Positions 1 to 27,700 are shown, numbered from the whole stretch's first letter. The stretch: DNA of 63,989 nt, filler included, from Guillardia theta CCMP2712 (GCF_000315625.1; 6 parts of 6 records of this genome joined end to end with filler, not necessarily neighbours in it); one strand, 5' to 3'. The notes: generated by a model from the sequence alone, not told the origin. Program-made: numbers and translations.

Positions 1-147
1 CTCCATCTCTTCCTCTTCCCCTCTCCCTCTTCCTCCAGAGAGTGAGCAGCAGAGGGAGAGAGTGGAAGAGGGAGAAGGGGAGGCAAAGGCAGAGAAAGAG
101 CGAGAGGAAGAGGGAAACAGAGGGGAAGAGAGGAGGAGAATAAGAGT

Positions 148-149
<2 letters not shown>

Positions 150-240
<91 letters not shown>
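150..240. repeat. (GA)n microsatellite
   Basis: Perfect AG dinucleotide run. Confidence 0.95.
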
Positions 241-244
<4 letters not shown>

Positions 245-336
245 GAGGAGGAGATCAGGAGGGAGGAGGAAGAGGAGGAGTAATGACGAGTTAGGAGGAG
301 GAGGATCATGATGATGAGGAGGAGGAGCATGATATT

Positions 337-3800: not shown

Positions 3801-5761
3801 GAGGAGGGGAGGATGGGGGAGGGAGAGAGGGAGGGAGGGAGGGAGGGAGGGGGGAGCAGGAGGGGGCGGTAATATTAGGAACTGACTCACTTGTCGAGAG
3901 CTGTCTTCACATGCAGAGCATAACTTCTTGCTGGGTTTGAATCACTGCGATGATCTCCGCGGAACATGTCTGGAAATAAGAAGTTCACATCGTTTCGTTG
4001 GCATCATCATCGTCATCAACATCAACTACTGCATCTACATCTACACCAGCATCTACTTCATCCCCATCCTCATGAACATCATCAGCATCTATCATCATCA
4101 TCATCAAGAACAGCGGTGGCGGTGTCAGCAGCAGCAATCTCAACCATATCATCGTCATCTAAATCTATCCTTGCGTCAACTATCTCATCAAAACCAACTT
4201 ATACCAGGTACTGGAACTTTCCAAACATTAGCAGGCTGTGGGAACCCTCCTTTCCCATCAAATTTGTACGGTGAAATCTTGATTAATTCTACGAAAAATC
4301 GAAAACGTTAGGGACAAGGTTGAAATTCGTCGTGAAGATAACCTTCTGTATGTCCGTGGTATGCTCCTTCCATAACGATGAAATCTTGAGCTTTGGTATG
4401 GGCCCTTGCGATCCCTTGTTAAAGACAAAGATGTCACTATCATCTACATCTACATCTACATCTACATCTGCATCTACATCTACATCTGCATCTGCATCTG
4501 CATCGACTTATTCACCTACCTCTACCTCTACCTCTACCTCTACCTCTACCTCTACCTCTACCTCTACCTCTACCTCTACCTCTAAATCTACCTCTACCTC
4601 TACCTCTACCTCTACCTCTACCTCTACCTCTACAGGATCAAGTTTCTCACTCAATGCAAGGTCATTCGCTTCTGAGCCTGAGTTGACGAAGAAGCAAACA
4701 TGAAGTTTCTGCATCAATCTTGCGTGAGGAAAACATGAAGGAACGGGGGCAAGGAGAGGAGAGGAGAGGAGAGGAGACGTCACAGGACAGACCAAATAAG
4801 AGAGGAGCACAAGGAGCAGAAGCGAAGAAGCAAGGTCAAGGACAAGGACAAGGACAAGGACAAGGACGAGAAGCGGCAGGAGCAGGAGGATCTAGGACTA
4901 TCTCGACCTCCGGGAAGAGTCTCGTCAATTGCTCAGCGTAATCTGTGAGCTGAAGAGGAAAGCACAGTATCAACGTGACGCTCTAGTGGAAGGATTGAGA
5001 GCAACCTCTGCATACACGTATCTTGTGTTGGTGTTGAGTTGCGCCAGCTTCAACCATAGAGTCAGGACAAGGAGAACATGAAACAGAACGAGGAGGAGGA
5101 GGATCAGAAGTTGAAGGGAGGAGAAGGGAGGAGGAGGGAGGAGGGAGAGGATCAGAGCATAGCAAGAGGGCAAGGACAAGAAGGTGTTGTTGGTTGAAAA
5201 AGTCTCAACACGTCACTACCTGCTCGGCCGCTGCTCTCACAACATGGGGGTGACAATGTCCGAGGCTCGCAGGATTGTTGACAAAATCCAAGAATGCCTT
5301 TGATAGATCCAGCGATGTCATCGTCATCCTCAGCGACAGCACAACAACATCCAACATGCCCTCCATCGTCCTCCACGTCACCGTCATCATTTCCGNNNNN
5401 NNNNNNNNNNNNNNNNNNNNNNNNNNNNNNNNNNNNNNNNNNNNNNNNNNNNNNNNNNNNNNNNNNNNNNNNNNNNNNNNNNNNNNNNNNNNNNNNNNNN
5501 NNNNNNNNNNNNNNNNNNNNNNNNNNNNNNNNNNNNNNNNNNNNNNNNNNNNNNNNNNNNNNNNNNNNNNNNNNNNNNNNNNNNNNNNNNNNNNNNNNNN
5601 NNNNNNNNNNNNNNNNNNNNNNNNNNNNNNNNNNNNNNNNNNNNNNNNNNNNNNNNNNNNNNNNNNNNNNNNNNNNNNNNNNNNNNNNNNNNNNNNNNNN
5701 NNNNNNNNNNNACTACTACTACTACTACTCCTACCATCATCATCATCATCATCTCCATCAT

Positions 5762-5808
<47 letters not shown>

Positions 5809-7841: not shown

Positions 7842-10098
7842 CTACTTGTCATCCAGGCCCCTCCGATGGTACAACCTCACATGCAACTCCCCTGTGCGAG
7901 CTCGTCAAGGGGTTGCGAGAGAGACAAGAGCGAGTCCATTACCCGACACGCGAGACTTCGGGGACCTCTTCTCGAGAGCACACCATTCGTCCTTGGTTGT
8001 CTGTGGAGGGAACAGTCACTTCCAGAGCCGAGGACAGCGAATCGTTGGTCCTCGACAAGTAACAAGGGCGGCATAAACGGAAGGAAGGCCGCCAGCAACT
8101 CACCTTGTTCTGCAACTGCGCCAAGGCCAGCTGTAACCTTCCAAGAAACTTGTCCTGGGGCAACAGGGTAAACAAGGGAACACAAGGGGGGAGGACGGAC
8201 CATGCTAAGACGCCCGCTCTTGCTCCACACTTCGATCATCAGAACATCCGCTGGCTCCGTGGCCACGAAGTCGAAGGCATTCTCCCATACAGGGTTAAGA
8301 TCGGCATGTACGACCTTGGTGCTTGCCATCCGCTTCTTTCCGAGGGAGCTGGATGAGCTGGTTCAGCGACTGAGCATGACGATGACGTCATCAGAAATCA
8401 CCTGAGCCATAGGGTACAGTACGGGTTGCTCGTGCCCCCGGTCTCCTTGCCTACAAGGTTCCTCGCCTCGATGATCGTCACCGTCAGGCTTCCCCTGTCC
8501 AACATTCCTGTCCAGTCGAAAATTCGATCGTTCTGGCAGCAAAGATGAGCGAGTCAGAATGAGCTCGAGCAAAGAGGGAGAGGAGGGCAATGTTGTGGTG
8601 CTAGAGGTACAGGAGGTCGAGGAGTTTGTGAAAGTGTGGATGGAGATAGTCGAGGAGTTGGCAATGAAGGTAGACGTGCTGGTGCTGGTGCTGTTGCTGG
8701 TGCAGTTACCTTGAGCCTGCATAGTTGAAACGTCGACCTGAACATCTCCTTGCACATTTCATAGTCCGGCTCCTCCTCGAAGGCGAGCTGCCGGGAGTAG
8801 TCTATGAACTTTTGAAAGCAAGAAGGAAGCCCCGCGCATAACTTTGTCGTAGAGATCTGCTCTTTGATCTGCCCGATTTTCTCATACTTCTCTGGCAGGT
8901 TGGCGGCTTTCACCCCCTGCCATGGCAGCCCACGACACGCCAGGTAGACCAAGACATATCCTATCGTCTCCAGGTCATCTCTTCTGCTCAGCTGAGCTCC
9001 ATGATGCGAGTTGATCGAGCAGTATCTGGCAGTGCCAACCAGGCTCGTCAGGTTTTTCTCCCTCTGCCCGATGTGTTTCCCAGTCTTCGGGTCTATGTAG
9101 AACTTCGAAAGCCCGAAGTCGACCGCATAGATCGTACCTGCATTCTCCCCTGCACGCACGTTTCAGCTCTGAAACACGGAAACAGTCACACGAGAGAGCC
9201 CACCTAGCCCCGTTAAGAAGTTGTCTGGCTTGATGTCTCGGTGCAACAGGCCACGGGAATGCATTTGCTTGCGAGTTTGTCAGCATAGCCGGAGAGCGAG
9301 GGTAAGAGGTGACAAGTGTTGCTCACCTGCGTCCTCAGCAGCATCTGATCTGCCAGTAGCAGGACAGTTTTGAGCGAAAAGCGGCCTCCACACAGCTCAA
9401 GGAGGTCTTCGATGTTGTGCCCGAGGCGGTCGATAACGATCATCTTCAGATTGTTCTCCTCTCCCTCCGCGATCAGCCTCGGGAATCCCTGCAGCAAGAG
9501 GGCAAGCATGGCTTCAGTGCCATCGCAGCTCCTCCTGACATGCTCGCTCGCCACTCACCGGCATCCCCCTCAGGTGCTTGTAGACGTTCACCTCCTGCTT
9601 CAGCTGCGGTACTTTGATGTCCCTCTTCTCTACCTTGATGGCCACCTCCTGCTGGGTGTTAATGTCTCGGGCATGAAAGATGTGCCCAAAGGATCCCTTC
9701 CCCAGCTCCCTCAGCAACTTGAACCGACCCAGCACGACCCAACCAATCAAAACTTTCGGAACCAGGGACGTAGCCGGGGCGACCTTGTCCTTCCCTTCAG
9801 TCGCAGGATTCGTGGCAACCGTTTCTCCTCTGACGGACGGCATGGTGCGAATTGGCCGCCTCCGCTCCTTGTGATCATGCTCGTGCGTCTTCCTCACCAT
9901 GCTCGTGTCCGATGAGTCGTTCACGAGCATCGAGGGCGACGCTAAGATCCCCGTCATGCCCGACGTCGGGCTCTCATGGTGCTCAGGTTGGACATCCACA
10001 TACAGCGGAGGGTCTGAAAACGCCCCTTCCCCCTCGTCACACCTAGCCTTCCTCCACTCATTCTCAGTATCGCACTGCATGTCAGGCGCTGCCTCCAT
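7842..10098 (-). CDS. Casein kinase 1 family kinase with C-terminal C2 domain
   Basis: Kinase motifs [69 protein letters not shown] and FDW. These are followed by the C2 motifs [11 protein letters not shown]...[19 protein letters not shown] and [23 protein letters not shown]. Confidence 0.9.
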
Positions 10099-14634: not shown

Positions 14635-17600
14635 CTATGTCAAGTTTCTTGCTGTTGAGACTTTCTTGGCGAGCTCCCTCAGCTTCGAGCAACTCTCCTC
14701 GTTGTTCTCCGCCAGGTACTGCAGGGCCCGACACCCCACGTTATGCAGCAGCAAGGACATGTGGTGGGTCTGCATCGCCTCCACCACCAGCTCGATCCCT
14801 CCGTCCTCCCTGATCTTGGCCTGGCTCACCCTGTTCCTCCTCCCCAGGCGCCCCAGAGCCCGGCATCCAGCTTCCTGCACACGAGGATACATCTTGAAGG
14901 TCTTCATCGCCCTCATCACCGCGTTGATCCCTCCCATCTCTCTGATCTCCCCCTGGCTGTGCGCGTCCTCCCATCCCAGCCAGCCCAGCGCGTCGCACCC
15001 TGCCGTCACCAGGACCGCATCGCTCGCAAACATCCTCATCGCCGCTATCACCGCATCGATCCCTCCTCCCTCCTTCACCCTCGTCCGGTTGATCTCGTTG
15101 TCCTGCATCAGGGCCAAGAGGGCGTTGCAACCGGCTTCCTGCACAAGGATCGACGTGGCGTGCTCCCTCAGCACTTTGAGCACGGCCTCGATCCCTCCGA
15201 TGTCTCTCAGCATGTGGCGGAGCTCCTGGTGCTTCAGCGCAATGGTGATCAAAGTCTTCAGTCCCACCTCTACCACCTCTGGTCTGTCCGCAAGCCTCGT
15301 CATCGCTGTCACCACGGCCTTCATCCCGGCTTTCAGGCACATGCTGTTCCTGACCTCATCCACGTGTATTTTCGCCTGCAGGATCTCCATCCCGGCTACT
15401 TGCACCTCGCAGTCCTCGCCGTTGTACTCCATCACCTTGCGCAGGTAGTCCACAAGCCAGCCCCCTTCCTTGATGAGCAAGAGGTTTCTTGGCGCTACCT
15501 CCGCGAGCTTGCCTAGGAACCCCATCACTGCGTGGATCATTGGCAGGTCCTTCATGTGCAGCTTCAGCGCCGTCTGCAAGTCCTCCTGCCGCAGCTTCTG
15601 TGCTATCTCCTCCGAGCAGTCCCCGTCGTCCTCCATCAGCATCGTCAGCACCTCCAAGGCGTACCTGAGGGTCTGCCCATGCTTGTGAGCCACCTTGATT
15701 GACTCCATCAGGGCCGAGACTCCTACAGCCTTTCTGATCCTCTCCCGGCTCTCCTCGTCGTCCTTGGCAAACCTCCAGATCGCCTCACACCCCAGCCTGT
15801 GCATCGCCAGCTTGCTCTTCTGCTGCTCCATCGCCTTCACGATGGCCTCGATCCCTCCCAGAGCTCTGATAGCATGATGATTCTTGAGGTTACGACAGGA
15901 CAGCCGCAGCAGGGCCTTGCAAGCTGCCTTTTGCGCCGCCGGGTCTTTGGACATGTTGATAGTCAAGACGAGCACATCGATACCTTTCTCTTGCCTGAAG
16001 CGCTCGCTTAACCTGTCGTCTGATGTTGCAAGCACTCCAAGCAGTTTGCATCCACAAGCTGGTAAGCTATCTATGTTGAAGTTGTGTTCCAATTGCTGCG
16101 AGATTGTTGTTACCAGTACCTCGACTCCCCCTGCCTCGATCAGCCTCCTTTGGACACTCTCGCTGCCATCGGCGAGGAGAAGCATGAACCTCAAACTCTT
16201 TGAACGATCTCCCCCATATCGGATCCAACCAGGCTTTCTCGATAGCTGCACCAAAGTCTCGACTACGCCTCCTTCAACAGCCATCAGCTTCGCTTCAGGA
16301 CCAACATGTTTGACAAGCTTCCGAAGCAACATGAGACCATCAAAACAGAGTTCCTGATTGTCTTGGTGCTTCTTCACAGCCTCCAATACCGTCTTCCCCG
16401 CTCCTTGCTCGTAGAGCTTTACGCTCGTCTGGACTGACTCAGCACATCCCTTCAGTAAATTACATGCAGCGCCCATTGTTCGTGCGTCGTTCCTATGCAC
16501 CTCAAAAGTCTTCAAGATCGTCTCCACTACTCCGCAATCCGGTATGGCCGTGATAAATTCGTCTGGCTCGATCTCAGATAATTGCCTAAGCGCGTCATAT
16601 CCAGCTGCCTGTATCTTCGCATCATCCGCATTCCTCACAATCGCCTCTGTTATCCGTTTGACCCTGCTCAGCACATCTATTTCTGGCCCGATCCATAACA
16701 AGGCCTCGAAGCCTTCCTCTTGTACCTCATAACTGTCCTTATGCCGCTTCATGCACTCCACCACAGTCTCGAGGGCTTCCATGTCCTTGGAGTCATCGCC
16801 CAGACTGCCGCCCCTGTCTGCATTTATGGACAAAGCCCTGATCGCGGCATGCAGTACATGCAAATCGTCCTTGTAACTTGTCAGAAGCTCTAACACGAAG
16901 TGAAACACTTCTGGCTCGACGAGCGGGCCGTCGTCTCCCACGTCTATTAGAATGTTGAAGATCATATCACAAGCCGTCACTTGCACCCCAGCAATGTCCT
17001 TGAACGCTTTCATCCCTGCCACCACCGCGTCGATACCCCCCGCGTCTCGGATCCTCAGGCCGTTGACATCGCAGTTGTTACAAAACGTTGCCAGCGCCTT
17101 GTTGCCAGCGATCAGCACGTTCACTGCTGCCGCATGCCTCGTCATCGCCGTCGACACAGCTTCGATTCCCCCTTCTTCCACGGTCTTGTCCATGGCCTCC
17201 AGGCTGCCCTGCACCAGCAATTGCAGTGCCTCGCATCCTGCTTCTTGTACCTCAGCGTTGTCCTCCTGCTCCCGCATCTTGTGCAGTATGCTCGCAATGC
17301 TCGCTGAGCCCCTCGCTTTCGCGTCGTCCATAAACGCTCGAAAGCTCGCGGTATCCCTTGGGGCCTTCCATGGGAGTACAGGACCAGCACGGTCGTCTGA
17401 GCACGGCGAGGCAGGTGCCGGCGCCTCCCTCGCCTTGGGACTAAGCTTCCATGTGTACATGCTTGCGGGGCTTCTCGTTACAAGCTGAAGCGTCGGCCCT
17501 CCAGCGCTCGAGTCCTTCATGACCATCTCGTCCAGAGCTCGGTTCATGCCCATGTGACGGTACAGACGCTTCGAGTCCTCGACGATGCTCTCCACCTCTC

Positions 17601-18252
17601 GTGCTGAGCTAGGCAGCACCACCACCCTCACGGCCTCCCCAAGCTGCCCTGCGTGTATGACAGTCGCGCTATGATTCAGAACCAGCACCCGCAGCCGCGT
17701 CGAGCTGCTTGCCGAAGCCGTCAGCCTCTCCACGAGGACCTCGGGGGAGACTTTATCCTTCCCCAGGACCAGGCGCCCCCTCTCGTCCGGACAGTCTACC
17801 TGCAGCACGCTCGGCTGGACTCTTGTGACACTCGCTACGAGCTCCTCCAGCCCCTTGTCGCAGCACAGCTCGAAACCCACCCGCCGCGCCATGTCCGCCA
17901 CACCCGCATCGCCCGAGTCCGCTGCTCCGAGGAGGAACTGGCTCTGCATGTGCTCGAGATGCTGCCGGGGCTTGCATGAGGCTCGCTCCCTCCCGTTGGA
18001 GAACAGGAGGACCTTACCAGGCTCCTCGCAGCTGAAAATCGCGTCCTGGGGTGCCTGGTGGGCAGCTGCTGTGTTGGAGTTGGCACATGGTGCCTGGGGA
18101 GCGGCAGGCAGGAGGGCACACGAGCTGCTCTGCTGGGCCCCTGCCGAGCGGCTCCTCTTAGCATTTGTGTCAAGATTTGATCCAGCATGAGGGACGGGGG
18201 GGTCGAGAGCCGCATCTCTGCCTCTCTTTCGCTTCCCGCCATCGCCTGCCAT
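14635..18252 (-). CDS. Intronless protein of about 1205 aa: basic N-terminus, degenerate CHAT-like domain, long ARM-repeat array (copy A)
   Basis: One long ORF with ~42-aa repeats of the form GGI-AV--AM--H-----VQ-AGC-AL--L. First ATG (MAGDGGKRKRGR) is at 18252. Confidence 0.85.
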   Translation of the reverse strand: MAGDGGKRKRGRDAALDPPVPHAGSNLDTNAKRSRSAGAQQSSSCALLPAAPQAPCANSNTAAAHQAPQDAIFSCEEPGKVLLFSNGRERASCKPRQHLEHMQSQFLLGAADSGDAGVADMARRVGFELCCDKGLEELVASVTRVQPSVLQVDCPDERGRLVLGKDKVSPEVLVERLTASASSSTRLRVLVLNHSATVIHAGQLGEAVRVVVLPSSAREVESIVEDSKRLYRHMGMNRALDEMVMKDSSAGGPTLQLVTRSPASMYTWKLSPKAREAPAPASPCSDDRAGPVLPWKAPRDTASFRAFMDDAKARGSASIASILHKMREQEDNAEVQEAGCEALQLLVQGSLEAMDKTVEEGGIEAVSTAMTRHAAAVNVLIAGNKALATFCNNCDVNGLRIRDAGGIDAVVAGMKAFKDIAGVQVTACDMIFNILIDVGDDGPLVEPEVFHFVLELLTSYKDDLHVLHAAIRALSINADRGGSLGDDSKDMEALETVVECMKRHKDSYEVQEEGFEALLWIGPEIDVLSRVKRITEAIVRNADDAKIQAAGYDALRQLSEIEPDEFITAIPDCGVVETILKTFEVHRNDARTMGAACNLLKGCAESVQTSVKLYEQGAGKTVLEAVKKHQDNQELCFDGLMLLRKLVKHVGPEAKLMAVEGGVVETLVQLSRKPGWIRYGGDRSKSLRFMLLLADGSESVQRRLIEAGGVEVLVTTISQQLEHNFNIDSLPACGCKLLGVLATSDDRLSERFRQEKGIDVLVLTINMSKDPAAQKAACKALLRLSCRNLKNHHAIRALGGIEAIVKAMEQQKSKLAMHRLGCEAIWRFAKDDEESRERIRKAVGVSALMESIKVAHKHGQTLRYALEVLTMLMEDDGDCSEEIAQKLRQEDLQTALKLHMKDLPMIHAVMGFLGKLAEVAPRNLLLIKEGGWLVDYLRKVMEYNGEDCEVQVAGMEILQAKIHVDEVRNSMCLKAGMKAVVTAMTRLADRPEVVEVGLKTLITIALKHQELRHMLRDIGGIEAVLKVLREHATSILVQEAGCNALLALMQDNEINRTRVKEGGGIDAVIAAMRMFASDAVLVTAGCDALGWLGWEDAHSQGEIREMGGINAVMRAMKTFKMYPRVQEAGCRALGRLGRRNRVSQAKIREDGGIELVVEAMQTHHMSLLLHNVGCRALQYLAENNEESCSKLRELAKKVSTARNLT

Positions 18253-21200
18253 GACCCAACAGGTCACCCCACCCTCTGGAACCCAAGGAAATCATACCCC
18301 CACCCCCCTTGCCAAAATCTCCTGGTACAAATAGTTATAGTCAAATCACAATTGCGGCTGGCTTTCGCTGGGCAGCATGGAGACAAAGGTCACTGCAGAC
18401 AAGAGCCTCTCGGCAGGGGCCCAGCAGAGCCTCTCGGCAGGGGCCCAGCAGAGCAGCTCGTGTGCCCTCCTGCCTGCCGCTCCCCAGGCACCATGTGCCA
18501 ACTCCAACACAGCAGCTGCCCACCAGGCACCCCAGGACGCGATTTTCAGCTGCGAGGAGCCTGGTAAGGTCCTCCTGTTCTCCAACGGGAGGGAGCGAGC
18601 CTCATGCAAGCCCCGGCAGCATCTCGAGCACATGCAGAGCCAGTTCCTCCTCGGAGCAGCGGACTCGGGCGATGTGGGTGTGGCGGACATGGCGCGGCGG
18701 GTGGGTTTCGAGCTGTGCTGCGACAAGGGGCTGGAGGAGCTCGTAGCAAGTGTCACAAGAGTCCAGCCGAGCGTGCTGCAGGTAGACTGTCCGGACGAGA
18801 GGGGGCGCCTGGTCCTGGGGAAGGATAAAGTCTCCCCCGAGATCCTCGTGGAGAGGCTGACGGCTTCGGCAAGCAGCTCGACGCGGCTGCGGGTGCTGGT
18901 TCTGAATCATAGCGCGACTGTCATACACGCAGGGCAGCTTGGGGAGGCCGTGAGGGTGGTGGTGCTGCCTAGCTCAGCACGAGAGGTGGAGAGCATCGTC
19001 GAGGACTCGAAGCATCTGTACCGTCACATGGGCATGAACCGAGCTCTGGACGAGATGGTCATGAAGGACTCGAGCGCTGGAGGGCCGACGCTTCAGCTTG
19101 TAACGAGAAGCCCCGCAAGCATGTACACATGGAAGCTTAGTCCCAAGGCGAGGGAGGCGCCGGCACCTGCCTCGCCGTGCTCAGACGACCGTGCTGGTCC
19201 TGTACTCCCATGGAAGGCCCCAAGGGATACCGCGAGCTTTCGAGCGTTTATGGACGACGCGAAAGCGAGGGGCTCAGCGAGCATTGCGAGCATACTGCAC
19301 AAGATGCGGGAGCAGGTGGACAACGCTGAGGTACAAGAAGCAGGATGCGAGGCACTGCAATTGCTGGTGCAGGGCAGCCTGGAGGCCATGGACAAGACCG
19401 TGGAAGAAGGGGGAATCGAAGCTGTGTCGACGGCGATGACGAGGCATGCGGCAGCAGTGAACGTGCTGATCGCTGGCAACAAGGCGCTGGCAACGTTTTG
19501 TAACAGCTGCGATGTCAACGGCCTGAGGATCCGAGACGCGGGGGGTATCGACGCGGTGGTGGCAGGGATGAAAGCGTTCAAGGACGTTGCTGGGGTGCAA
19601 GTGACGGCTTGTGATATGATCTTCAACATTCTAATAGACGTGGGAGACGACGGCCCGCTCGTCGAGCCAGAAGTGTTTCACCTCGTGTTGGAGCTTCTGA
19701 CAAGTTACAAGGACGATTTGCATGTACTGCCTGCCGCGATCAGGGCTTTGTCCGTAAATGCAGACAGGGGCGGCAGTCTGGGCGATGACTCCAAGGACAT
19801 GGAAGCCCTCGAGACTGTGGTGGAGTGCATGAAGCGGCATAAGGACAGTTATGAGGTACAAGAGGAAGGCTTCGAGGCCTTGGCATGGATTGGGATTCGC
19901 ACAGATGTGCTGAGCGGGGTCAAACGGATAACAGAGGCGATTGTGAGGAATGCGGATAATGCGAAGATGCAGGCAGCTGGATATGACGCGCTTACGCAAA
20001 TGTACCAGATCAAGTATGACGAATTTATCACGGCCATACCGGATTGTGGGGTAGTGGAGACGATCTTGAAGACTTTTGAGGTGCACAGGAACGACGCACG
20101 AACAATGGGCGCTGCATGCAGTGTACTACAGGTATGTGCTGAGTCAGTCCAGACGAGCGTAAAGATCTACGAGCAAGGAGCGGGGAAGACGGTATTGGAG
20201 GCTGTGAAGAAGCACCAAGACAATCAGGAACTCTGTTTTGATGGTCTCATATTGCTTCGGAAGCTTGTCAAACATGTTGGTCCTGAAGCGAAGCTGATGG
20301 CTGTTGAAGGAGGCGTAGTCGAGACTTTGGTGCAGCTAATGAGAAAGCCTGGTTGGATCCGATATGGGGGAGATCGTTCAAAGAGTTTGAGGTTCATGCT
20401 TCTCCTCGCCGATGGCAGCGAGAGTGTCCAAAGGAGGCTGATCGAGGCAGGGGGAGTCGAGGTACTGGTAACAACAATCTCGCAGCAATTGGAACACAAC
20501 TTCAACATAGATAGCTTACCAGCTTGTGGATGCAAACTGCTTGGAGTGCTTGCAACATCAGACGACAGGTTAAGCGAGCGCTTCAGGCAAGAGAAAGGTA
20601 TCGATGTGCTCGTCTTGACTATCAACATGTCCAAAGACCCGGCGGCGCAAAAGGCAGCTTGCAAGGCCCTGCTGCGGCTGTCCTGTCGTAACCTCAAGAA
20701 TCATCATGCTATCAGAGCTCTGGGAGGGATCGAGGCCATCGTGAAGGCGATGGAGCAGCAGAAGAGCAAGCTGGCGATGCACAGGCTGGGGTGTGAGGCG
20801 ATCTGGAGGTTTGCCAAGGACGACGAGGAGAGCCGGGAGAGGATCAGAAAGGCTGTAGGAGTCTCGGCCCTGATGGAGTCAATCAAGGTGGCTCACAAGC
20901 ATGGGCAGACCCTCAGGTACGCCTTGGAGGTGCTGACGATGCTGATGGAGGACGACGGGGACTGCTCGGAGGAGATAGCACAGAAGCTGCGGCAGGAGGA
21001 CTTGCAGACGGCACTGAAGCTGCACATGAAGGACCTGCCAATGATCCACGCAGTGATGGGGTTCCTAGGCAAGCTCGCGGAGGTAGCGCCAAGAAACCTC
21101 TTGCTCATCAAGGAAGGGGGCTGGCTTGTGGACTACCTGCGCAAGGTGATGGAGTACAACGGCGAGGACTGCGAGGTGCAAGTAGCCGGGATGGAGATCC

Positions 21201-21927
21201 TGCAGGCGAAAATACACGTGGATGAGGTCAGGAACAGCATGTGCCTGAAAGCAGGGATGAAGGCCGTGGTGACAGCGATGACGAGGCTTGCGGACAGACC
21301 AGAGGTGGTAGAGGTGGGACTGAAGACCTTGATCACCATTGCGCTGAAGCACCAGGAGCTCCGCCACATGCTGAGAGACATCGGAGGGATCGAGGCCGTG
21401 CTCAAAGTGCTGAGGGAGCACGCCACGTCGATCCTTGTGCAGGAAGCCGGTTGCAACGCCCTCTTGGCCCTGATGCAGGACAACGAGATCAACCGGACGA
21501 GGGTGAAGGAGGGAGGAGGGATCGATGCGGTGATAGCGGCGATGAGGATGTTTGCGAGCGATGCGGTCCTGGTGACGGCAGGGTGCGACGCGCTGGGCTG
21601 GCTGGGATGGGAGGACGCGCACAGCCAGGGGGAGATCAGAGAGAGGGGAGGGATCAACGCGGTGATGAGGGCGATGAAGACCTTCAAGATGTATCCTCGT
21701 GTGCAGGAAGCTGGATGCCGGGCTCTGGGGCGCCTGGGGAGGAGGAACAGGGTCAGCCAGGCCAAGATCAGGGAGGACGGAGGGATCGAGCTGGTGGTGG
21801 AGGCGATGCAGACCCACCACATGTCCTTGCTGCTGCATAACGTGGGATGTCGGGCCCTGCAGTACCTGGCGGAGAACAACGAGGAGAGTTGCTCGAAGCT
21901 GAGGGAGCTCGCCAAGAAAGTCTCAAC
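14654..21927. repeat. Large inverted duplication: arms ~14654-18149 and ~18432-21927, spacer ~280 bp
   Basis: Mirror ORF coordinates sum to 36581 at the points checked (16952/19629, 14741/21840, 17977/18604), so no net indel is evident between arms. Confidence 0.95.
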
Positions 21928-21934
21928 GTCCTGA
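18377..21934 (+). CDS. Intronless 1185-aa degenerate-CHAT + ARM-repeat protein (copy B, inverted paralog)
   Basis: The ORF is colinear with copy A, with about 30 substitutions counted by eye and different N- and C-terminal tips. Confidence 0.85.
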   Translation: METKVTADKSLSAGAQQSLSAGAQQSSSCALLPAAPQAPCANSNTAAAHQAPQDAIFSCEEPGKVLLFSNGRERASCKPRQHLEHMQSQFLLGAADSGDVGVADMARRVGFELCCDKGLEELVASVTRVQPSVLQVDCPDERGRLVLGKDKVSPEILVERLTASASSSTRLRVLVLNHSATVIHAGQLGEAVRVVVLPSSAREVESIVEDSKHLYRHMGMNRALDEMVMKDSSAGGPTLQLVTRSPASMYTWKLSPKAREAPAPASPCSDDRAGPVLPWKAPRDTASFRAFMDDAKARGSASIASILHKMREQVDNAEVQEAGCEALQLLVQGSLEAMDKTVEEGGIEAVSTAMTRHAAAVNVLIAGNKALATFCNSCDVNGLRIRDAGGIDAVVAGMKAFKDVAGVQVTACDMIFNILIDVGDDGPLVEPEVFHLVLELLTSYKDDLHVLPAAIRALSVNADRGGSLGDDSKDMEALETVVECMKRHKDSYEVQEEGFEALAWIGIRTDVLSGVKRITEAIVRNADNAKMQAAGYDALTQMYQIKYDEFITAIPDCGVVETILKTFEVHRNDARTMGAACSVLQVCAESVQTSVKIYEQGAGKTVLEAVKKHQDNQELCFDGLILLRKLVKHVGPEAKLMAVEGGVVETLVQLMRKPGWIRYGGDRSKSLRFMLLLADGSESVQRRLIEAGGVEVLVTTISQQLEHNFNIDSLPACGCKLLGVLATSDDRLSERFRQEKGIDVLVLTINMSKDPAAQKAACKALLRLSCRNLKNHHAIRALGGIEAIVKAMEQQKSKLAMHRLGCEAIWRFAKDDEESRERIRKAVGVSALMESIKVAHKHGQTLRYALEVLTMLMEDDGDCSEEIAQKLRQEDLQTALKLHMKDLPMIHAVMGFLGKLAEVAPRNLLLIKEGGWLVDYLRKVMEYNGEDCEVQVAGMEILQAKIHVDEVRNSMCLKAGMKAVVTAMTRLADRPEVVEVGLKTLITIALKHQELRHMLRDIGGIEAVLKVLREHATSILVQEAGCNALLALMQDNEINRTRVKEGGGIDAVIAAMRMFASDAVLVTAGCDALGWLGWEDAHSQGEIRERGGINAVMRAMKTFKMYPRVQEAGCRALGRLGRRNRVSQAKIREDGGIELVVEAMQTHHMSLLLHNVGCRALQYLAENNEESCSKLRELAKKVSTS

Positions 21935-22895
21935 AGGAGGAGGAGAGAGCTCGAGCGGCAGGTTATAGCTCCGTCAGTAGACTTCACTGAGACGATGGAT
22001 GACTGAGGCAGCCTGGCAACTTGGCAACGTCCACTCTGGGCCACTGGGCCTCAGTGTTAGGGTCCCGGGCCCCGGAGAGCGCGGCTGGGTGGTGGAGAGG
22101 TTCCGATCATGTTCATCATGATATTGATGTGAGTCTTGGCCACCGGCGGGTCACAAGTCAGTAAATCATTGGCTTTACCAGTTTCATCACTATCAGGATT
22201 GACTGTTGCCGCAGTGCGGCAAGTCTGTTTGACTAGTAAGTCTTGGGCCAGTCACCGGGGGCTCGGCCGGGCCCCGGGCCCCGGACTCTACGGTGTCACC
22301 GGCGGCAGTGCCATTAGCCTGAGTACTACGGTACGGTACGGTAAGTCGGTCAGGTCACCGGGTCAAAGTCATCTCAGTTCCTTTGGCGCCCGGGCGAGTT
22401 CGAGCGGCCGTGGGCCCGTCATCCGATCGGCGAGTCATCGACCGATCGGGGCCGAGGCGGGCCCGGGAGGTTGACTGAATTGAATCTTGAGATGCAGCGT
22501 TTCGAATCTCCTCTACACGTTGGGGTCAGGTCATGTCTTGTTCACCCCACCCCCTCCATACAACAATCCCTGAATGTACCCTACCTTTTTACTATTAGAT
22601 CTTCGAACTTATTCTGGTAGGGTACATACCCCTACCCTACGCGTATCCTACAGTGACACCTCCGCTCCCAACCCCACCCCACCGTCATCCACCAACGCAA
22701 CTTTCTCTATTGTACCCCCTGCTTCCTGTAGTTCAGAAGGGGTCCAAGTCTGTTTTATTCACACTGTACCCCACCCCCTTTGCGATGGTTTTGTTCCCTT
22801 GAGATCGGATATCCCACCTCCTCCCTCAGTCGCCATCGCCCTGCTACCTGCGACTGCCGTTCCTCCTCTCTCACAGCTCTGTACATCGATCATCG

Positions 22896-24710: not shown

Positions 24711-27700
24711 ATGGCAGATGCACCGGGGGAATCTCGGCATGGGGCGATGGATATGGTGGAAGTTGGGAAGAGCAGGGAGGAGGAGAGGGAGGAAGGGCAA
24801 GGGAGGTACCTGAGGAGTGACAGCCCAGGGGACAAGTCGAAGACCTTCTACTTCGTGTCCGACCCTTTCAACCACGAGCTGAGATGGTATGCGGACAGAG
24901 GAAAATGGCAGGAGAATCTGGATCCAGTAGGAAGTCTTGACTTGACAGACTGTCGGGTGAGCGATCACGGGCACTGTGTTGAAGGATACTGCCTCCACTT
25001 GTCGAGCCATGATGGCAGGAGCATCAGGCTTTTCACGGGGGACGGTGAGAACGGGCGAGCATGGTTCCTAGCGCTTAATCATGCCGTGCGCAAGACGCGA
25101 GCGCAGGCCCCAGCGCAGCCTGCGGCAGAGACTCTACGTACGCAATGGAAGGTGCTGAAGCGCATGAAAGGAGGCATCCATGAGACTCGCATCCTCGTCT
25201 TGGACTTCGACCTTAGCCAGCTGTACAACATGTCGGAGGACGGAGTCGTCAAGAAGAAGTTCAGGTTTTCCGCCATCTCCAGGCTCACGCAGGATCCTGT
25301 CTCGAGTGTTGTGACGGTTCACTTCAACATCAGGAGGCAGAGGCCTTACCAGCTGAAGTTCGAGAATGCAAGCGATAGGAACAACTTCGTTCAGTCTATG
25401 CTGAAATTTGTCATCAAACCTTCCCACATCTCGGAGGTTGAATCCAACAGTATACATGAGCTCCTCTCCGTCGAAGAGAACGATGCTCTAATCTTTCAGC
25501 GATGGAAGAATAACATCTGCAAGGTATACCTGTCCCTGTCCTCTCCTCTCCTCTCCTCCCCTGTCCTCTCCTCTTCTCGCCTCTGCTCTGCTCTGCTCTG
25601 CTCTCCACTCCCTTTTCTGACGGCTCTCCCAGGACCCTGAGATGGTCCAGCGTCGCGATCCTCGTCTAACGACCAAGATCAAGCTTCTCCTCAACAGAAT
25701 CATCTACATCCCTAGGAACCCGGCTGAGCCCGTGATAGACGCCGAAGAAGGAGGGAACGTCATTCATCCTAGATCACCTGCCGCAATCGCTCTGGCCGCG
25801 CTCTCGGGCGTGTGCTTGCTGTACACTGTTGCGACCGCTCCCTACATCCTTGCTTTCTACTGGGACAAAGGAGCATGCACATCAAGCAATCTAGATGTGT
25901 CGGACATGTTTGTAAGACGATGGAGGGATGGGGTGAAAGATGCTGAGTGCGACTTGCAGGTCGACACGGTCTTCATGCTGGAGATTGTGATGGTGATGAG
26001 TTTGACTCTGTGCAGGAGTGTGTTCAGCTGATATGAGTGCTTGCAGTCTTTCTGCATTGGAAGATACGTGCATGGCAAATACCTATCAAAGTATGTCTGA
26101 CTTGACTTTGTGAATGATGATGTATCGAGTCGATGTTCTGTGCGTGATGACGATGGTGACATGTCATGATGATCAAGCAGATAACCTAGAAAGACGGCAG
26201 AACGAGGTTGACGAGGAAGAGGAAGATGAGGAATGATAGAGATAGAGACAGAGATAGAGATAGAGATAGAGATAGAGATAGAGATAGAGATAGAGATGAA
26301 GGATTTGATGCTAGCGATCGTGATGATAGGCTTGTTGTTTTCAAGTTGTTGATGTAGTATACAATCACAACAATGCTTGTCCGTCCTCAGTTTGATCGTC
26401 TTGATGTGATCAACCTGACCAAGACTCAGGTTTGGACTCGTCGCTCGGGACTACATCTACTCTGGCCAGCTGCTCTTTGACTGCATCACCTCCATCCCCG
26501 TCGCCTGGATCGAATACTCTCAGAGGATTCTGTGCTCAGAGGACAAGACAGGGGACGGACGTTCCGTCGTTAGCCTCCTCCGCGTCGTCCGTATCATCAA
26601 GCCGCTCCGCCTGCTCCGCCTGCTCAGAATGCTGAAGCTCTTCAATCACAGGCTGTTCAAGGCTGTGAAGGACTCGATGAGGATCAAACCTGACGCTGTG
26701 CGCGTGATCAACCTCGTGTTCATGGTCATGACGTCCTCGCACCTGTCCGCCTGCGTCTTCTGGCTAGTCAAGATCCTGTCGAACCCCGGGGAGGACGTCA
26801 ACCGCTTCCTGGAGATGAACAACCACCACGACCCCTGGTTCTGCGACTCTCCTGACCAGGTAGGGGACCTGAGCTGCAAGAGGGGGAACGTCTTCAGCGT
26901 CTACATCATGTGCATCTACTTTGCTATGACGACCATCACGACGGTGGGCTATGGCGACATCGCTGGGTCCACCACGGAGGAGCGGATAGTCTGCATGTGC
27001 ATACAGTGCTTCGGGTACGTGTGAAGGAAGGGAGGGAGGAGGGTGAGAGATGGAGGGAGGAAGAGGGAGGAGGGTGGAAGAGGGAGGAGGAAGGAGGGAG
27101 GTAGAAGGAGGGAGGTAGTTGTAGAGAGCGGATTGAGTGAAGGAGAGAAGGGGGTAGACGAGGGGAAGCGATGGAGAAAGGAGGAGAGGAGGAAGATTGG
27201 GAAAGGAAGGAGAGGAGAGGATTCTTCCTTCGAATTGTCTTACCCTGTTGCAGCTCCGTCATCTTCGCCACCATCATGTCGCAGATCTCAACGGTAGGAT
27301 ACGAATCATGTGATGCCGCAGGGTGTGACTGACCTTTCTCTCCTCCTCCTCCTCCCTACCTCCCACCCTCTCTCTCCCTTCTTCCTCTCTCTCCCGTCTC
27401 CTCTCTCTCTCTCCTCCTCCTCCTCNNNNNNNNNNNNNNNNNNNNNNNNNNNNNNNNNNNNNNNNNNNNTTAATTAATTAANNNNNNNNNNNNNNNNNNN
27501 NNNNNNNNNNNNNNNNNNNNNNNNNACCGACGAGGACAAGGTGAGGAGGGAGGAGAGGCGACGGGCTCGTGCCTGAGGGAGTGAGTGATGGCTGCAGGGT
27601 CCTCGCTGCTCTTGCACTCAATCGCCTTCCTTCGACGTCTTCTCCCCGAGCGAGATCACCTACTTCGATCAGGCCAGGAAGACCAAGACAACCTTGCGTA

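What the first reader, a model, noticed from the sequence alone, without database searches (positions are those of the whole stretch)
14635..21934. Palindromic head-to-head pair of intronless pseudo-caspase + ARM-repeat genes (candidate paired receptor system)
Seen: two ~3.6-kb intronless ORFs in an intron-dense genome form an inverted repeat, with only 124 bp between their start codons. Established: head-to-head paired receptors and caspase-like domains fused to superstructure-forming repeats are recurring designs in innate immunity, for example paired plant NLRs and CHAT-TPR proteins. Inference: this is a co-regulated sensor pair or diversifying receptor family in an alga, maintained by arm-to-arm gene conversion.
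Basis: partly seen in the sequence, partly recalled or inferred. Interest (0 to 1): 0.8.

Follow-up and report, generated by a model that had tools for sequence, protein, structure and literature searches.

The report
Palindromic pair of dead-caspase ARM genes
Two nearly identical intronless genes sit head-to-head as a real 7.3-kb palindrome in a freshwater alga; each encodes a caspase-like (CHAT) domain that has lost its catalytic residues, fused to about 880 residues of armadillo repeats, a rare architecture otherwise found only in cryptophyte algae and of unknown function.

Summary
Arms 14654-18154 and 18427-21927 are each exactly 3,501 nt, with 54 mismatches and no indels. They carry two intact ORFs (1,205 and 1,185 aa) whose ATGs lie 124 bp apart.

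The "pseudo-caspase + ARM" call is also right. The N-terminal domain has only 11 relatives among 1.84 billion representative proteins. All the named ones are cryptophyte (Guillardia, Hanusia). The family profile hits the solved SAVED-CHAT protease (E 2.4e-11) and the model matches it best (Z 15.1). Most relatives keep the His/Cys dyad. The window copies and a collinear Hanusia ortholog have lost both residues.

Short-read contigs of a non-identical isolate reproduce the spacer and both outer junctions, with arms at about 1.6x flank depth, so an assembly artefact is unlikely.

Divergence is mosaic: 32 of the 54 differences lie in one 251-nt patch, where dS is 0.19 against 0.009 elsewhere. That indicates gene conversion. 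dN/dS is about 0.67, so positive selection is not shown.

The paired-NLR analogy is not supported: the copies are 96% identical, have no NTPase domain, and two Guillardia homologs are not paired. Expression is unproven, because a raw RNA run gave 3 partial reads. An immune or regulatory role remains inference.

The parts
14635..18252 (-). Left copy CDS (ATG 18252-18250, stop 14637-14635), 1,205 aa. It has a unique N-terminal 33 aa with an Arg/Lys-rich, NLS-like stretch (KRKRGR...KRSR) and a unique C-terminal ARNLT.
   Evidence: Its N-terminus resembles that of the Hanusia ortholog P0001 (MAG..G..RGR), so this copy probably keeps the ancestral 5' end.
18377..21934 (+). Right copy CDS, 1,185 aa. 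It has a unique N-terminal 17 aa and differs from the left copy in its last residues.
   Evidence: Kozak-like context at the ATG (A at -3, G at +4).
14654..18154 (-). Left arm of the inverted repeat (3,501 nt).
18427..21927 (+). Right arm of the inverted repeat (3,501 nt). It starts at codon 17/18 of the plus copy and ends 2 codons before its stop.
18155..18426 (.). Unique 272-nt spacer. It holds both start codons, both unique 5' coding ends and the 124-bp inter-ATG region (18253-18376), which is the presumed bidirectional promoter.
   Evidence: No residual homology between the spacer halves. A 344-nt short-read contig of run X1 spans it exactly.
18402..18454 (+). 24-nt tandem duplication (2.2 copies, 100% match) at the inner edge of the right arm. 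It encodes SLSAGAQQ twice.
18539..19111 (+). Pseudo-CHAT (caspase-fold) domain of the right copy, aa ~55-245. The catalytic His is missing (VDC-PDE, aa 136-141, nt 18782-18799). The catalytic Cys is replaced by Ser179 (nt 18911-18913).
17470..18042 (-). Pseudo-CHAT domain of the left copy, with the same dead motifs (VDC-PDE aa 152-157, Ser195).
19274..21931 (+). ARM-repeat solenoid of the right copy, aa ~300-1185.
   Evidence: Pfam ARM_LRRK2 3e-22, Atx10homo_assoc, ZER1-like_2nd and Arm, all above cut-off. LRRK2, Vac8 and beta-catenin chains hit by sequence. All-helical model with pLDDT 86.
14654..17307 (-). ARM-repeat solenoid of the left copy.
19883..20133 (+). Divergent patch, aa 503-586 of the right copy. 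32 of the 54 arm differences lie here (12.7% against 0.68% elsewhere). They cluster in the last turns of three successive long helices.
16448..16698 (-). Mirror position of the divergent patch in the left copy.

Best explanation
This is a genuine head-to-head inverted duplication of one intronless gene, not an artefact.

The gene belongs to a rare family, so far seen only in cryptophytes, built from an N-terminal CHAT (clan CD, caspase-fold) domain followed by an ARM-repeat solenoid. The window copies and their Hanusia ortholog form a pseudo-protease branch. The catalytic His is deleted and the catalytic Cys is Ser, yet this domain is the best-conserved part of the protein.

The duplicated unit is almost exactly the coding sequence. 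The left copy keeps the ancestral-looking N-terminus. The right copy acquired a new start in the spacer.

The two copies have exchanged sequence by gene conversion. The arms are about 99.3% identical except for one 251-nt patch with 20-fold higher synonymous divergence. Either the patch escaped homogenisation or it was copied in from a third paralog.

Inferred mechanism, not shown: the ARM solenoid binds a partner or ligand, with specificity set partly by the variable patch, which lies on three adjacent H3-type helices. The dead CHAT domain acts as a non-cleaving interaction module that pairs or oligomerises with active CHAT-ARM paralogs and tunes them, in the way the pseudo-caspase cFLIP tunes caspase-8. 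The two copies would then offer two binding variants, and possibly two localisations, since only the left copy has the basic NLS-like N-terminus.
For: Structure of the locus:
- Arms, ORFs and spacer are as described.
- In run X1 a contig spans the whole spacer plus 36 nt of both arms. Two different flank contigs join the arm's outer end, and one of them reads the left copy's own 3' end. Arm depth is 103-118 against 64-71 in the flanks.
- X1 has 3 private differences at sites where both reference arms agree, so it is not simply the reference data.

Domain identity:
- The exhaustive HMMER search found 11 relatives, and the named ones are from Guillardia and Hanusia. Most carry ARM tails.
- The family profile hits 8tl0 SAVED-CHAT at E 2.4e-11, aligned through both motifs. 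The aligned His and Cys are 47 residues apart, like the published H375/C422 dyad.
- Fold: Foldseek E 2.9e-8. VIA-align Z 15.1, followed by DdvA, C11 proteases, Dronc, Csx29, caspases, separase, metacaspase, MALT1 and c-FLIP. All listed Atlas neighbour sets carry Pfam CHAT.
- Dead dyad in the window copies and in P0001; 9 of 11 relatives keep both residues.

Constraint:
- P0001 is collinear over its full length. The pseudo-CHAT domain is 50% identical, against 32-46% for the ARM parts.
- The 54 differences between the arms include no indel and no stop codon.

Conversion:
- dS is 0.187 in the patch against 0.0093 outside it, and the clustering has P = 4e-23.
- The homology boundaries are sharp, with no residual similarity beyond them.

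Host origin:
- GC3 of 0.72 lies within the range of the neighbouring exons.
- The neighbours are ordinary intron-containing kinase, C2 and PH genes.
Against: - No functional or expression evidence. The raw RNA run X22 gave only 3 partial reads at the right outer junction. The runs that hold over half of the words and are labelled 'RNA?' are guesses.
- dN/dS between the copies is about 0.65-0.69 on small counts, so relaxed constraint on one or both copies cannot be excluded.
- The presence of active CHAT-ARM paralogs in this genome was not testable. They are shown only in Hanusia and Guillardia.
- The Ser that replaces the Cys could in principle act as a nucleophile with another base. 'Dead' is a sequence prediction.
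- The spacer contig has only half the flank depth, and the right-type patch unitig has roughly two-copy depth in X1. Both are unexplained.
- Mapping of the variable residues to one surface rests on secondary structure only, because no coordinates were available.
Confidence: 0.6

Rival explanations
1. This is a young, selectively neutral inverted duplication. The 3.5-kb unit duplicated recently (dS ~0.009), the copies are redundant, and the divergent patch was pasted into one copy once from a third, ~87% identical paralog by ectopic conversion. There is no ongoing arm-to-arm homogenisation and no specialisation.
For: Divergence outside the patch is very low and the boundaries are sharp, with no older homology beyond them. 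dN/dS of ~0.65 is not clearly below 1. The right-type patch unitig has roughly two-copy depth in X1, which a third locus carrying that patch would explain. The family shows local duplication in Guillardia.
Against: No third paralog could be looked for: none lies in the window and none was found in the JGI metagenomes. Both copies keep 3.6-kb ORFs without any indel. The copies have acquired different, Kozak-compatible starts.
Confidence: 0.22
2. This is a paired immune receptor: a co-regulated sensor/helper pair analogous to head-to-head plant NLR pairs, induced by virus or stress.
For: Head-to-head arrangement with 124 bp between the ATGs. The caspase-fold domain's nearest structural relatives are bacterial conflict-system CHAT domains fused to TIR, NACHT, AAA_35 or EAD modules. 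The variable patch lies in the fastest-evolving ARM repeats.
Against: The copies are 96% identical, so there is no sensor/helper differentiation. There is no NTPase or other signalling domain. The Guillardia homologs are not paired. dN/dS in the patch is 0.67 with equally raised dS, so there is no sign of positive selection. No expression signal was seen.
Confidence: 0.1
3. One or both copies are silent and decaying: a dead-end duplicate of an already inactivated protease gene.
For: Raw RNA reads are essentially absent. dN/dS in the pseudo-CHAT part is 1.3 on very few changes. The catalytic residues are lost.
Against: The dead-dyad form is conserved and collinear in Hanusia at 41% identity, with the dead domain the best-conserved part, so loss of catalysis is old and the protein has stayed under constraint. 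The 54 differences include no stop or frameshift. Roughly one in ten neutral histories would avoid stops, and the absence of indels adds further support (my estimate). Several runs guessed to be RNA hold more than half of the words.
Confidence: 0.06
4. This is an assembly artefact: a single gene, or two alleles, folded into a false palindrome.
For: Fold-back chimeras do occur in long-read assemblies. The spacer contig has only half the flank depth in X1.
Against: An independent short-read graph contains the unique spacer joined to both arms. It also contains two different outer flanks that both join the gene's 3' end, which a single copy cannot give. Arm depth is about 1.6-1.8x the flank depth. 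Each arm has its own in-frame start and stop. The palindrome lies mid-contig, between ordinary genes.
Confidence: 0.02

Closest known systems
Bacterial CHAT proteases fused to sensor or repeat modules (SAVED-CHAT of Haliangium, PDB 8tl0; TPR-CHAT/Csx29, PDB 7zoq)
   Same: Same caspase-type fold, and the family profile aligns through both catalytic motifs. The design is the same: a CHAT domain joined to a ligand- or partner-binding module. SAVED-CHAT is switched on by oligomerisation (bioRxiv 10.1101/2023.06.23.546230).
   Different: The window protein is eukaryotic. Its partner module is ~880 aa of ARM repeats placed C-terminal to CHAT. The window proteins lack both dyad residues. There is no CRISPR or cyclic-nucleotide context.
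Active CHAT-ARM proteins of cryptophytes (Guillardia theta XP_005827433 and XP_005822416; Hanusia phi EukProt entries)
   Same: Same two-part architecture and a detectable homologous N-terminal domain (E 1e-18 to 1e-11).
   Different: They keep the HLACHGS and LNxCxSG motifs. The Guillardia genes checked are not in inverted pairs, and one has introns.
cFLIP(L), the human pseudo-caspase (PMC7586951)
   Same: A caspase-fold domain that has lost its catalytic residues and is retained under constraint alongside active paralogs. c-FLIP appears among the fold matches at Z 7.7.
   Different: No death-effector domains. ARM repeats instead. Heterodimerisation with an active partner is only inferred here.
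Separase
   Same: A large helical-repeat region combined with a clan-CD protease domain in one chain. Separases appear among the fold matches at Z 8.3-8.9.
   Different: The domain order is reversed. Separase is active, universal and single-copy, and there is no sequence relationship beyond the fold.
Gene-bearing palindromes kept alike by arm-to-arm gene conversion (primate and mouse sex-chromosome palindromes: PMC8600007, PMC8327919, bioRxiv 10.1101/800185)
   Same: Inverted arms with a unique spacer, one gene copy per arm, very high arm identity, and a mosaic pattern that points to conversion.
   Different: The arms are only 3.5 kb and cover just the coding sequence. The genes face each other across the spacer. 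The organism is an alga and no sex-chromosome context is known. Conversion is inferred from a single genome.
Head-to-head paired plant NLRs (e.g. RGA4/RGA5, RRS1/RPS4; from my own knowledge)
   Same: Divergent orientation with a very short shared upstream region.
   Different: NLR pairs are two different genes with an NB-ARC domain and sensor/helper roles. Here there are two near-identical copies without an NTPase domain.

Membership tests
CHAT domain / clan CD caspase-fold proteases | Caspase-type alpha/beta sandwich fold | tested here: met
   Model pLDDT 75, pTM 0.73. 8tl0 is the top hit by Foldseek (E 2.9e-8) and by VIA-align (Z 15.1, 171 aa, rmsd 3.2), followed by many clan-CD proteases. 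All 9 listed Atlas neighbour sets carry PF12770.
CHAT domain / clan CD caspase-fold proteases | Significant sequence similarity to CHAT | tested here: inconclusive
   The family profile A1 hits the CHAT chain 8tl0_A at E 2.4e-11. The window domain alone gets no Pfam hit. The relatives' Pfam CHAT hits (19.5-22.8 bits) stay under the 24-bit cut-off. PADLOC SAVED_CHAT scores 2.8e-5 for P0011 only. NCBIfam gives nothing.
CHAT domain / clan CD caspase-fold proteases | Catalytic His-Cys dyad | tested here: not met
   In alignment A1 the His column is a gap (VDC-PDE) and the Cys column is Ser179 in both window copies and in P0001. 9 of 11 relatives keep both residues. The equivalence to H375/C422 is supported by the identical 47-residue spacing. 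The window protein is therefore a pseudo-CHAT, not an active member.
Armadillo-repeat proteins | Tandem ~40-aa three-helix repeats forming a solenoid | tested here: met
   Pfam ARM_LRRK2 (79 bits against a cut-off of 26), Arm, Atx10homo_assoc and ZER1-like_2nd. PDB sequence hits to LRRK2 ARM, Vac8 and beta-catenin. All-helical model of aa 420-720 with pLDDT 86.
Paired (sensor/helper) NLR-type immune receptors | Head-to-head genes sharing a short upstream region | tested here: met
   124 bp between the ATGs.
Paired (sensor/helper) NLR-type immune receptors | Central NB-ARC/NACHT NTPase domain | tested here: not met
   No NTPase family hit in either protein.
Paired (sensor/helper) NLR-type immune receptors | Two divergent partners with distinct roles | tested here: not met
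   The copies are 96% identical in protein. They differ only in the termini and one ARM patch.
Palindromes maintained by arm-to-arm gene conversion | Inverted arms of very high identity around a unique spacer | tested here: met
   98.5% identity overall and 99.3% outside the patch, with a 272-nt spacer.
Palindromes maintained by arm-to-arm gene conversion | Evidence of sequence exchange between the arms | tested here: inconclusive
   A 20-fold dS contrast between the patch and the rest requires some conversion event. Whether it was arm-to-arm or came from a third paralog cannot be told from one genome. Variant phasing in short-read contigs is unreliable.
Palindromes maintained by arm-to-arm gene conversion | Palindrome conserved across species, with arms more alike within than between species | not testable with these tools
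   A lake metagenome (X12) holds 95-99% identical pieces but no spacer or junction contigs.
Pseudo-caspase regulators (cFLIP-like) | Caspase fold with lost catalytic residues, conserved under constraint | tested here: met
   (the dead domain is 50% identical to the Hanusia ortholog and is the best-conserved region).
Pseudo-caspase regulators (cFLIP-like) | Active paralog in the same genome and physical pairing with it | not testable with these tools
   Active and dead forms co-occur in Hanusia phi. This genome could not be searched, and interaction needs experiments.

The most novel reading that the evidence does not exclude
Cryptophyte algae have a lineage-specific caspase-fold/ARM system built from a CHAT domain of bacterial conflict-system type. 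In it, catalytically dead CHAT-ARM proteins act as ligand-sensing decoys or regulators of active CHAT-ARM proteases. The palindromic arrangement serves to generate and exchange variants of a ligand-binding ARM patch by gene conversion. This would be a repeat-based, NTPase-free innate-immunity or cell-death module in a secondary alga.
Probability: 0.1. Interest if true: 0.8.

Novelty: new variant of a known kind. Interest (0 to 1): 0.5.

Why it matters
CHAT and other caspase-fold proteases joined to repeat or sensor modules are central to bacterial defence and to eukaryotic cell death. Almost nothing is known about such systems in cryptophytes or other secondary algae.

This locus documents three things:
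- A rare CHAT-ARM family with both active and conserved dead members.
- A clean small-scale example of a gene palindrome with a conversion mosaic, outside animal sex chromosomes.
- A natural pair of variants differing mainly in one ARM surface patch and in an NLS-like N-terminus.

That gives concrete handles for experiments: protease assays, partner pull-downs and localisation. If the dead copies regulate active paralogs, it would be an independent invention of the cFLIP principle. If not, the locus is still a useful annotation of an uncharacterised family.

Tried and rejected
- The N-terminal domain alone against Pfam and PDB sequences gave nothing.
- The word-based homolog search on the N-terminal region gave nothing. 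On the ARM region it returned only distant generic ARM proteins, such as a Trypanosoma LRRK2-ARM-like protein. On the neighbouring PH-domain ORF, tried for taxonomy, it gave nothing. The run labels are coded, but lake and freshwater metagenomes hold the stretch.
- JGI metagenome scans gave no relatives, either with the window protein or with the active-member alignment. The first alignment was too variable for patterns.
- Rfam found no RNA family in the piece.
- Literature searches for CHAT plus cryptophyte, armadillo or Guillardia gave nothing relevant.
- NCBIfam gave no hits.
- A mobile-element or viral origin is rejected. There are no transposase, viral or other extra domains, GC3 is host-like, and the neighbours are ordinary intron-bearing genes.
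- Older homology extending beyond the arms is rejected.
- Further copies in the window are rejected.
- I first read a depth bin of 152.9 in X1 as a hidden extra contig. It is fully explained by overlaps of three listed contigs.
- Variant phasing from short-read contigs (X1, X2) was not used as evidence for conversion, because the contigs can switch arms at every identical stretch.

Full report
**1. The observation**

The piece (1-27425) contains two outstanding ORFs: 14635..18267 on the minus strand and 18377..21934 on the plus strand. No other ORF exceeds 310 aa.

The repeat finder and blastn give one inverted repeat, with arms at 14654-18154 and 18427-21927. A global alignment shows both arms are exactly 3,501 nt, with 54 mismatches and no indel. 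All other inverted matches in the piece are trinucleotide microsatellites.

The first ATG of the minus-strand ORF is at 18252 and that of the plus-strand ORF at 18377. Both ATGs have a purine at -3 and G at +4.

Homology starts at codon 17/18 of the right copy (codon 33/34 of the left) and ends 2-6 codons before the stops. Each copy therefore has its own start, its own first 17-33 residues and its own last residues. There is no residual similarity in the spacer halves or the outer flanks. A 24-nt unit at the inner edge of the right arm is tandemly duplicated.

**2. Is the palindrome real?**

I laid four runs on 17500-22700. In run X1 (DNA-like, organism A):
- A 344-nt contig matches 18119-18462 without a difference. 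That is the whole spacer plus 36 nt of each arm.
- Two different contigs attach to the arm's outer end (21898-21927). One continues into the right flank. The other continues with letters that are the reverse complement of 14635-14653, the left copy's own 3' end.
- Arm contigs have depth 103-118, against 64-71 for the two flanks.

A single-copy gene cannot have both flanks joined to its 3' end and a spacer joined at both ends to its 5' end.

X1's arm contig also carries three differences (18658, 19255, 19260) at sites where both reference arms agree. So X1 is not just the reference data replayed.

Two depth features are unexplained (note). The spacer contig has half the flank depth, which could be hairpin bias or heterozygosity. 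The right-type patch unitig 19928-20080 has roughly two-copy depth. Long reads were not available.

**3. What the genes encode**

*ARM repeats.* Residues ~300-1185 pass the Pfam cut-offs for ARM_LRRK2, Atx10homo_assoc, ZER1-like_2nd and Arm. They hit LRRK2, Vac8 and beta-catenin chains by sequence. A model of aa 420-720 is all-helical, with pLDDT 86.

*N-terminal domain.* The first ~300 residues have no Pfam or PDB sequence hit on their own. Protein-language features gave a weak CHAT lead. The exhaustive HMMER search of 1.84 billion representatives found just 11 relatives. The named ones are from the cryptophytes Guillardia theta and Hanusia phi, plus one ENA contig. Most have ARM tails. tblastn shows the 'partial' Guillardia protein P0003 is also followed by ARM repeats on the same strand.

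*The catalytic motifs.* In the alignment the relatives carry hLHLACHGS and LVVLNxCxSG. A profile of the alignment hits the solved SAVED-CHAT protease 8tl0 at E 2.4e-11, through exactly these motifs. The aligned His and Cys are 47 residues apart, as are the published catalytic H375 and C422.

*The fold.* A model built from the alignment (pLDDT 75, pTM 0.73) has 8tl0 as its best match by Foldseek (E 2.9e-8). An independent aligner agrees (Z 15.1) and then lists DdvA, C11 proteases, Dronc, Csx29, caspases, separases, metacaspases, legumain, gingipain, MALT1 and c-FLIP. All nine listed Atlas neighbour sets carry Pfam CHAT, mostly fused to TIR, NACHT, AAA_35 or EAD modules of bacterial conflict systems.

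*The dead active site.* In both window copies the His column is a one-residue gap (VDC-PDE) and the Cys column is Ser179 (Ser195 in the left copy). The same holds for P0001 of Hanusia. Nine of the 11 relatives keep both residues, and P0004 keeps His but has Ser for Cys.

**4. Age and constraint**

P0001 (1,180 aa) is collinear with the window proteins from end to end, at 41% identity. This confirms that the ORF is a complete intronless coding sequence. It also shows that the dead-dyad form predates the split of the two organisms.

The dead domain is the best-conserved part (50% identity). The central ARM region is the least conserved, at 18-32%. P0001's Arg/Gly-rich N-terminus resembles that of the left copy, so the left copy probably keeps the ancestral 5' end. 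The right copy's start appears to be new. Only the left copy has the basic KRKRGR...KRSR stretch, which looks like a nuclear localisation signal (my reading, untested).

**5. Differences between the copies**

Of the 54 differences, 32 lie in 19883-20133 (aa 503-586). That is 12.7% divergence there against 0.68% elsewhere, with P = 4e-23 for the clustering.

- NG86 estimates in the patch: dN 0.126, dS 0.187.
- NG86 estimates outside the patch: dN 0.0060, dS 0.0093.
- The ratio is about 0.65-0.69 everywhere.

Because synonymous divergence is raised 20-fold together with non-synonymous divergence, the patch has a different history rather than faster adaptive change. Either it escaped homogenisation after an older duplication, or it was copied in from a third paralog. 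Both readings involve gene conversion. Neither shows positive selection.

The variable residues sit in the last turns of three successive long helices of the model (H73-90, H110-126, H155-168, which are aa 492-509, 529-545 and 574-587). In canonical ARM proteins the H3 helices line the ligand groove (established knowledge). The same stretch is also the least conserved against the ortholog.

**6. Context**

The flanks are microsatellite-rich. They carry ordinary eukaryotic gene pieces:
- a protein-kinase domain split over at least two minus-strand ORFs, which implies introns;
- a C2 exon;
- a PH-domain ORF.

GC3 of the copies (0.72) lies within the neighbours' range. No RNA family and no further copy is present.

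In Guillardia, one homolog has introns and is followed by a tandem ARM fragment that is 61% identical to its own tail. The other is solitary. Neither locus has an inverted repeat. Pairing is therefore not a family trait on this small sample.

**7. Expression**

The only raw RNA run (X22, about 6% of it read, 19.8 million reads) gave three partial reads at 21850-22023. Twelve runs guessed to be RNA hold some of the words, and eight of those hold half or more, but their nature is uncertain. The Hanusia ortholog comes from EukProt, and I believe that dataset is a transcriptome. Transcription of the window copies is therefore open.

**8. Interpretation**

Shown:
- a real palindromic duplicate of an intronless pseudo-CHAT-ARM gene;
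- a rare family found only in cryptophytes, with active and dead members;
- a conversion mosaic between the copies.

Inferred:
- The ARM solenoid is the binding module.
- The dead CHAT domain is an interaction module that pairs with active paralogs. Caspase-fold proteases are typically switched by dimerisation or oligomerisation, as in the SAVED-CHAT filaments. The one human pseudo-caspase works by heterodimerising with caspase-8 (PMC7586951).
- The two copies provide two binding and localisation variants.

The paired-NLR reading fails two defining tests: there is no NTPase, and there are no divergent partners. The mammalian palindrome literature (PMC8600007, PMC8327919, bioRxiv 10.1101/800185) is the closest analogue for the DNA architecture, but at a much smaller scale and with the arms limited to the coding sequence.

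**9. Verdict**

The immune 'paired receptor' reading is speculation. I rate this as a new variant of known kinds (CHAT plus repeat proteins, pseudo-caspases, gene palindromes), of moderate interest.

Noticed in passing
window 7880-10098 (minus strand): Pieces of an ordinary eukaryotic gene. Protein-kinase profile positions 2-56 lie in ORF 9517-10098 and positions 135-240 in ORF 8557-9159, so at least two introns interrupt the kinase domain. A C2-domain exon lies at 7880-8329.
   Followed up: partly
window 24711-25637 (plus strand): A 309-aa ORF with PH-domain hits. The word-based search of 5.8 billion proteins found no relative, which suggests that this organism's proteome is essentially absent from the public protein collections.
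   Followed up: partly
window 51-327, 597-668, 1372-1613, 4443-4633, 5735-5808 and other sites: The flanks are dense in purine/pyrimidine and trinucleotide microsatellites: (GA)n, (TGA)n/(CAT)n, and TCTACC x32. The (TGA)n and (CAT)n tracts produce all the spurious inverted-repeat pairs I2-I25. The palindrome arms are free of such repeats.
   Followed up: no
window 18119-18462 and 19928-20080 (run X1): Depth oddities in an independent short-read run. The spacer contig has half the flank depth (35.5 against 64-71). The right-type patch unitig has about two-copy depth (119.9). Possible causes are hairpin bias, heterozygosity, conversion polymorphism or a third paralog. Unresolved.
   Followed up: partly
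L001 14555-15200 (Guillardia theta JH993031.1): About 2 kb downstream of the CHAT-ARM gene P0002, on the same strand, lies a 176-aa ARM-only gene that is 61% identical to P0002's C-terminal repeats. It is a tandem partial duplicate.
   Followed up: partly
L002 10001-12822 (Guillardia theta JH993090.1): The 'partial' 277-aa CHAT protein P0003 and the next 471-aa gene model on the same strand together look like one CHAT-ARM gene that the annotation split.
   Followed up: partly
P0004 (ENA metagenome contig, 633 aa): This family member keeps the catalytic His (HLTCHGS) but has Ser in place of the catalytic Cys (LNLSYSS). It is a second, independent or intermediate loss of the nucleophile.
   Followed up: no
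run X12 (freshwater metagenome) on window 17803-22527: A lake metagenome holds pieces that are 95-99% identical to the locus, including a junction with the left-type patch letters at 19903. A close relative of this organism therefore lives in that lake, and the left-type patch variant is seen in the wild.
   Followed up: no
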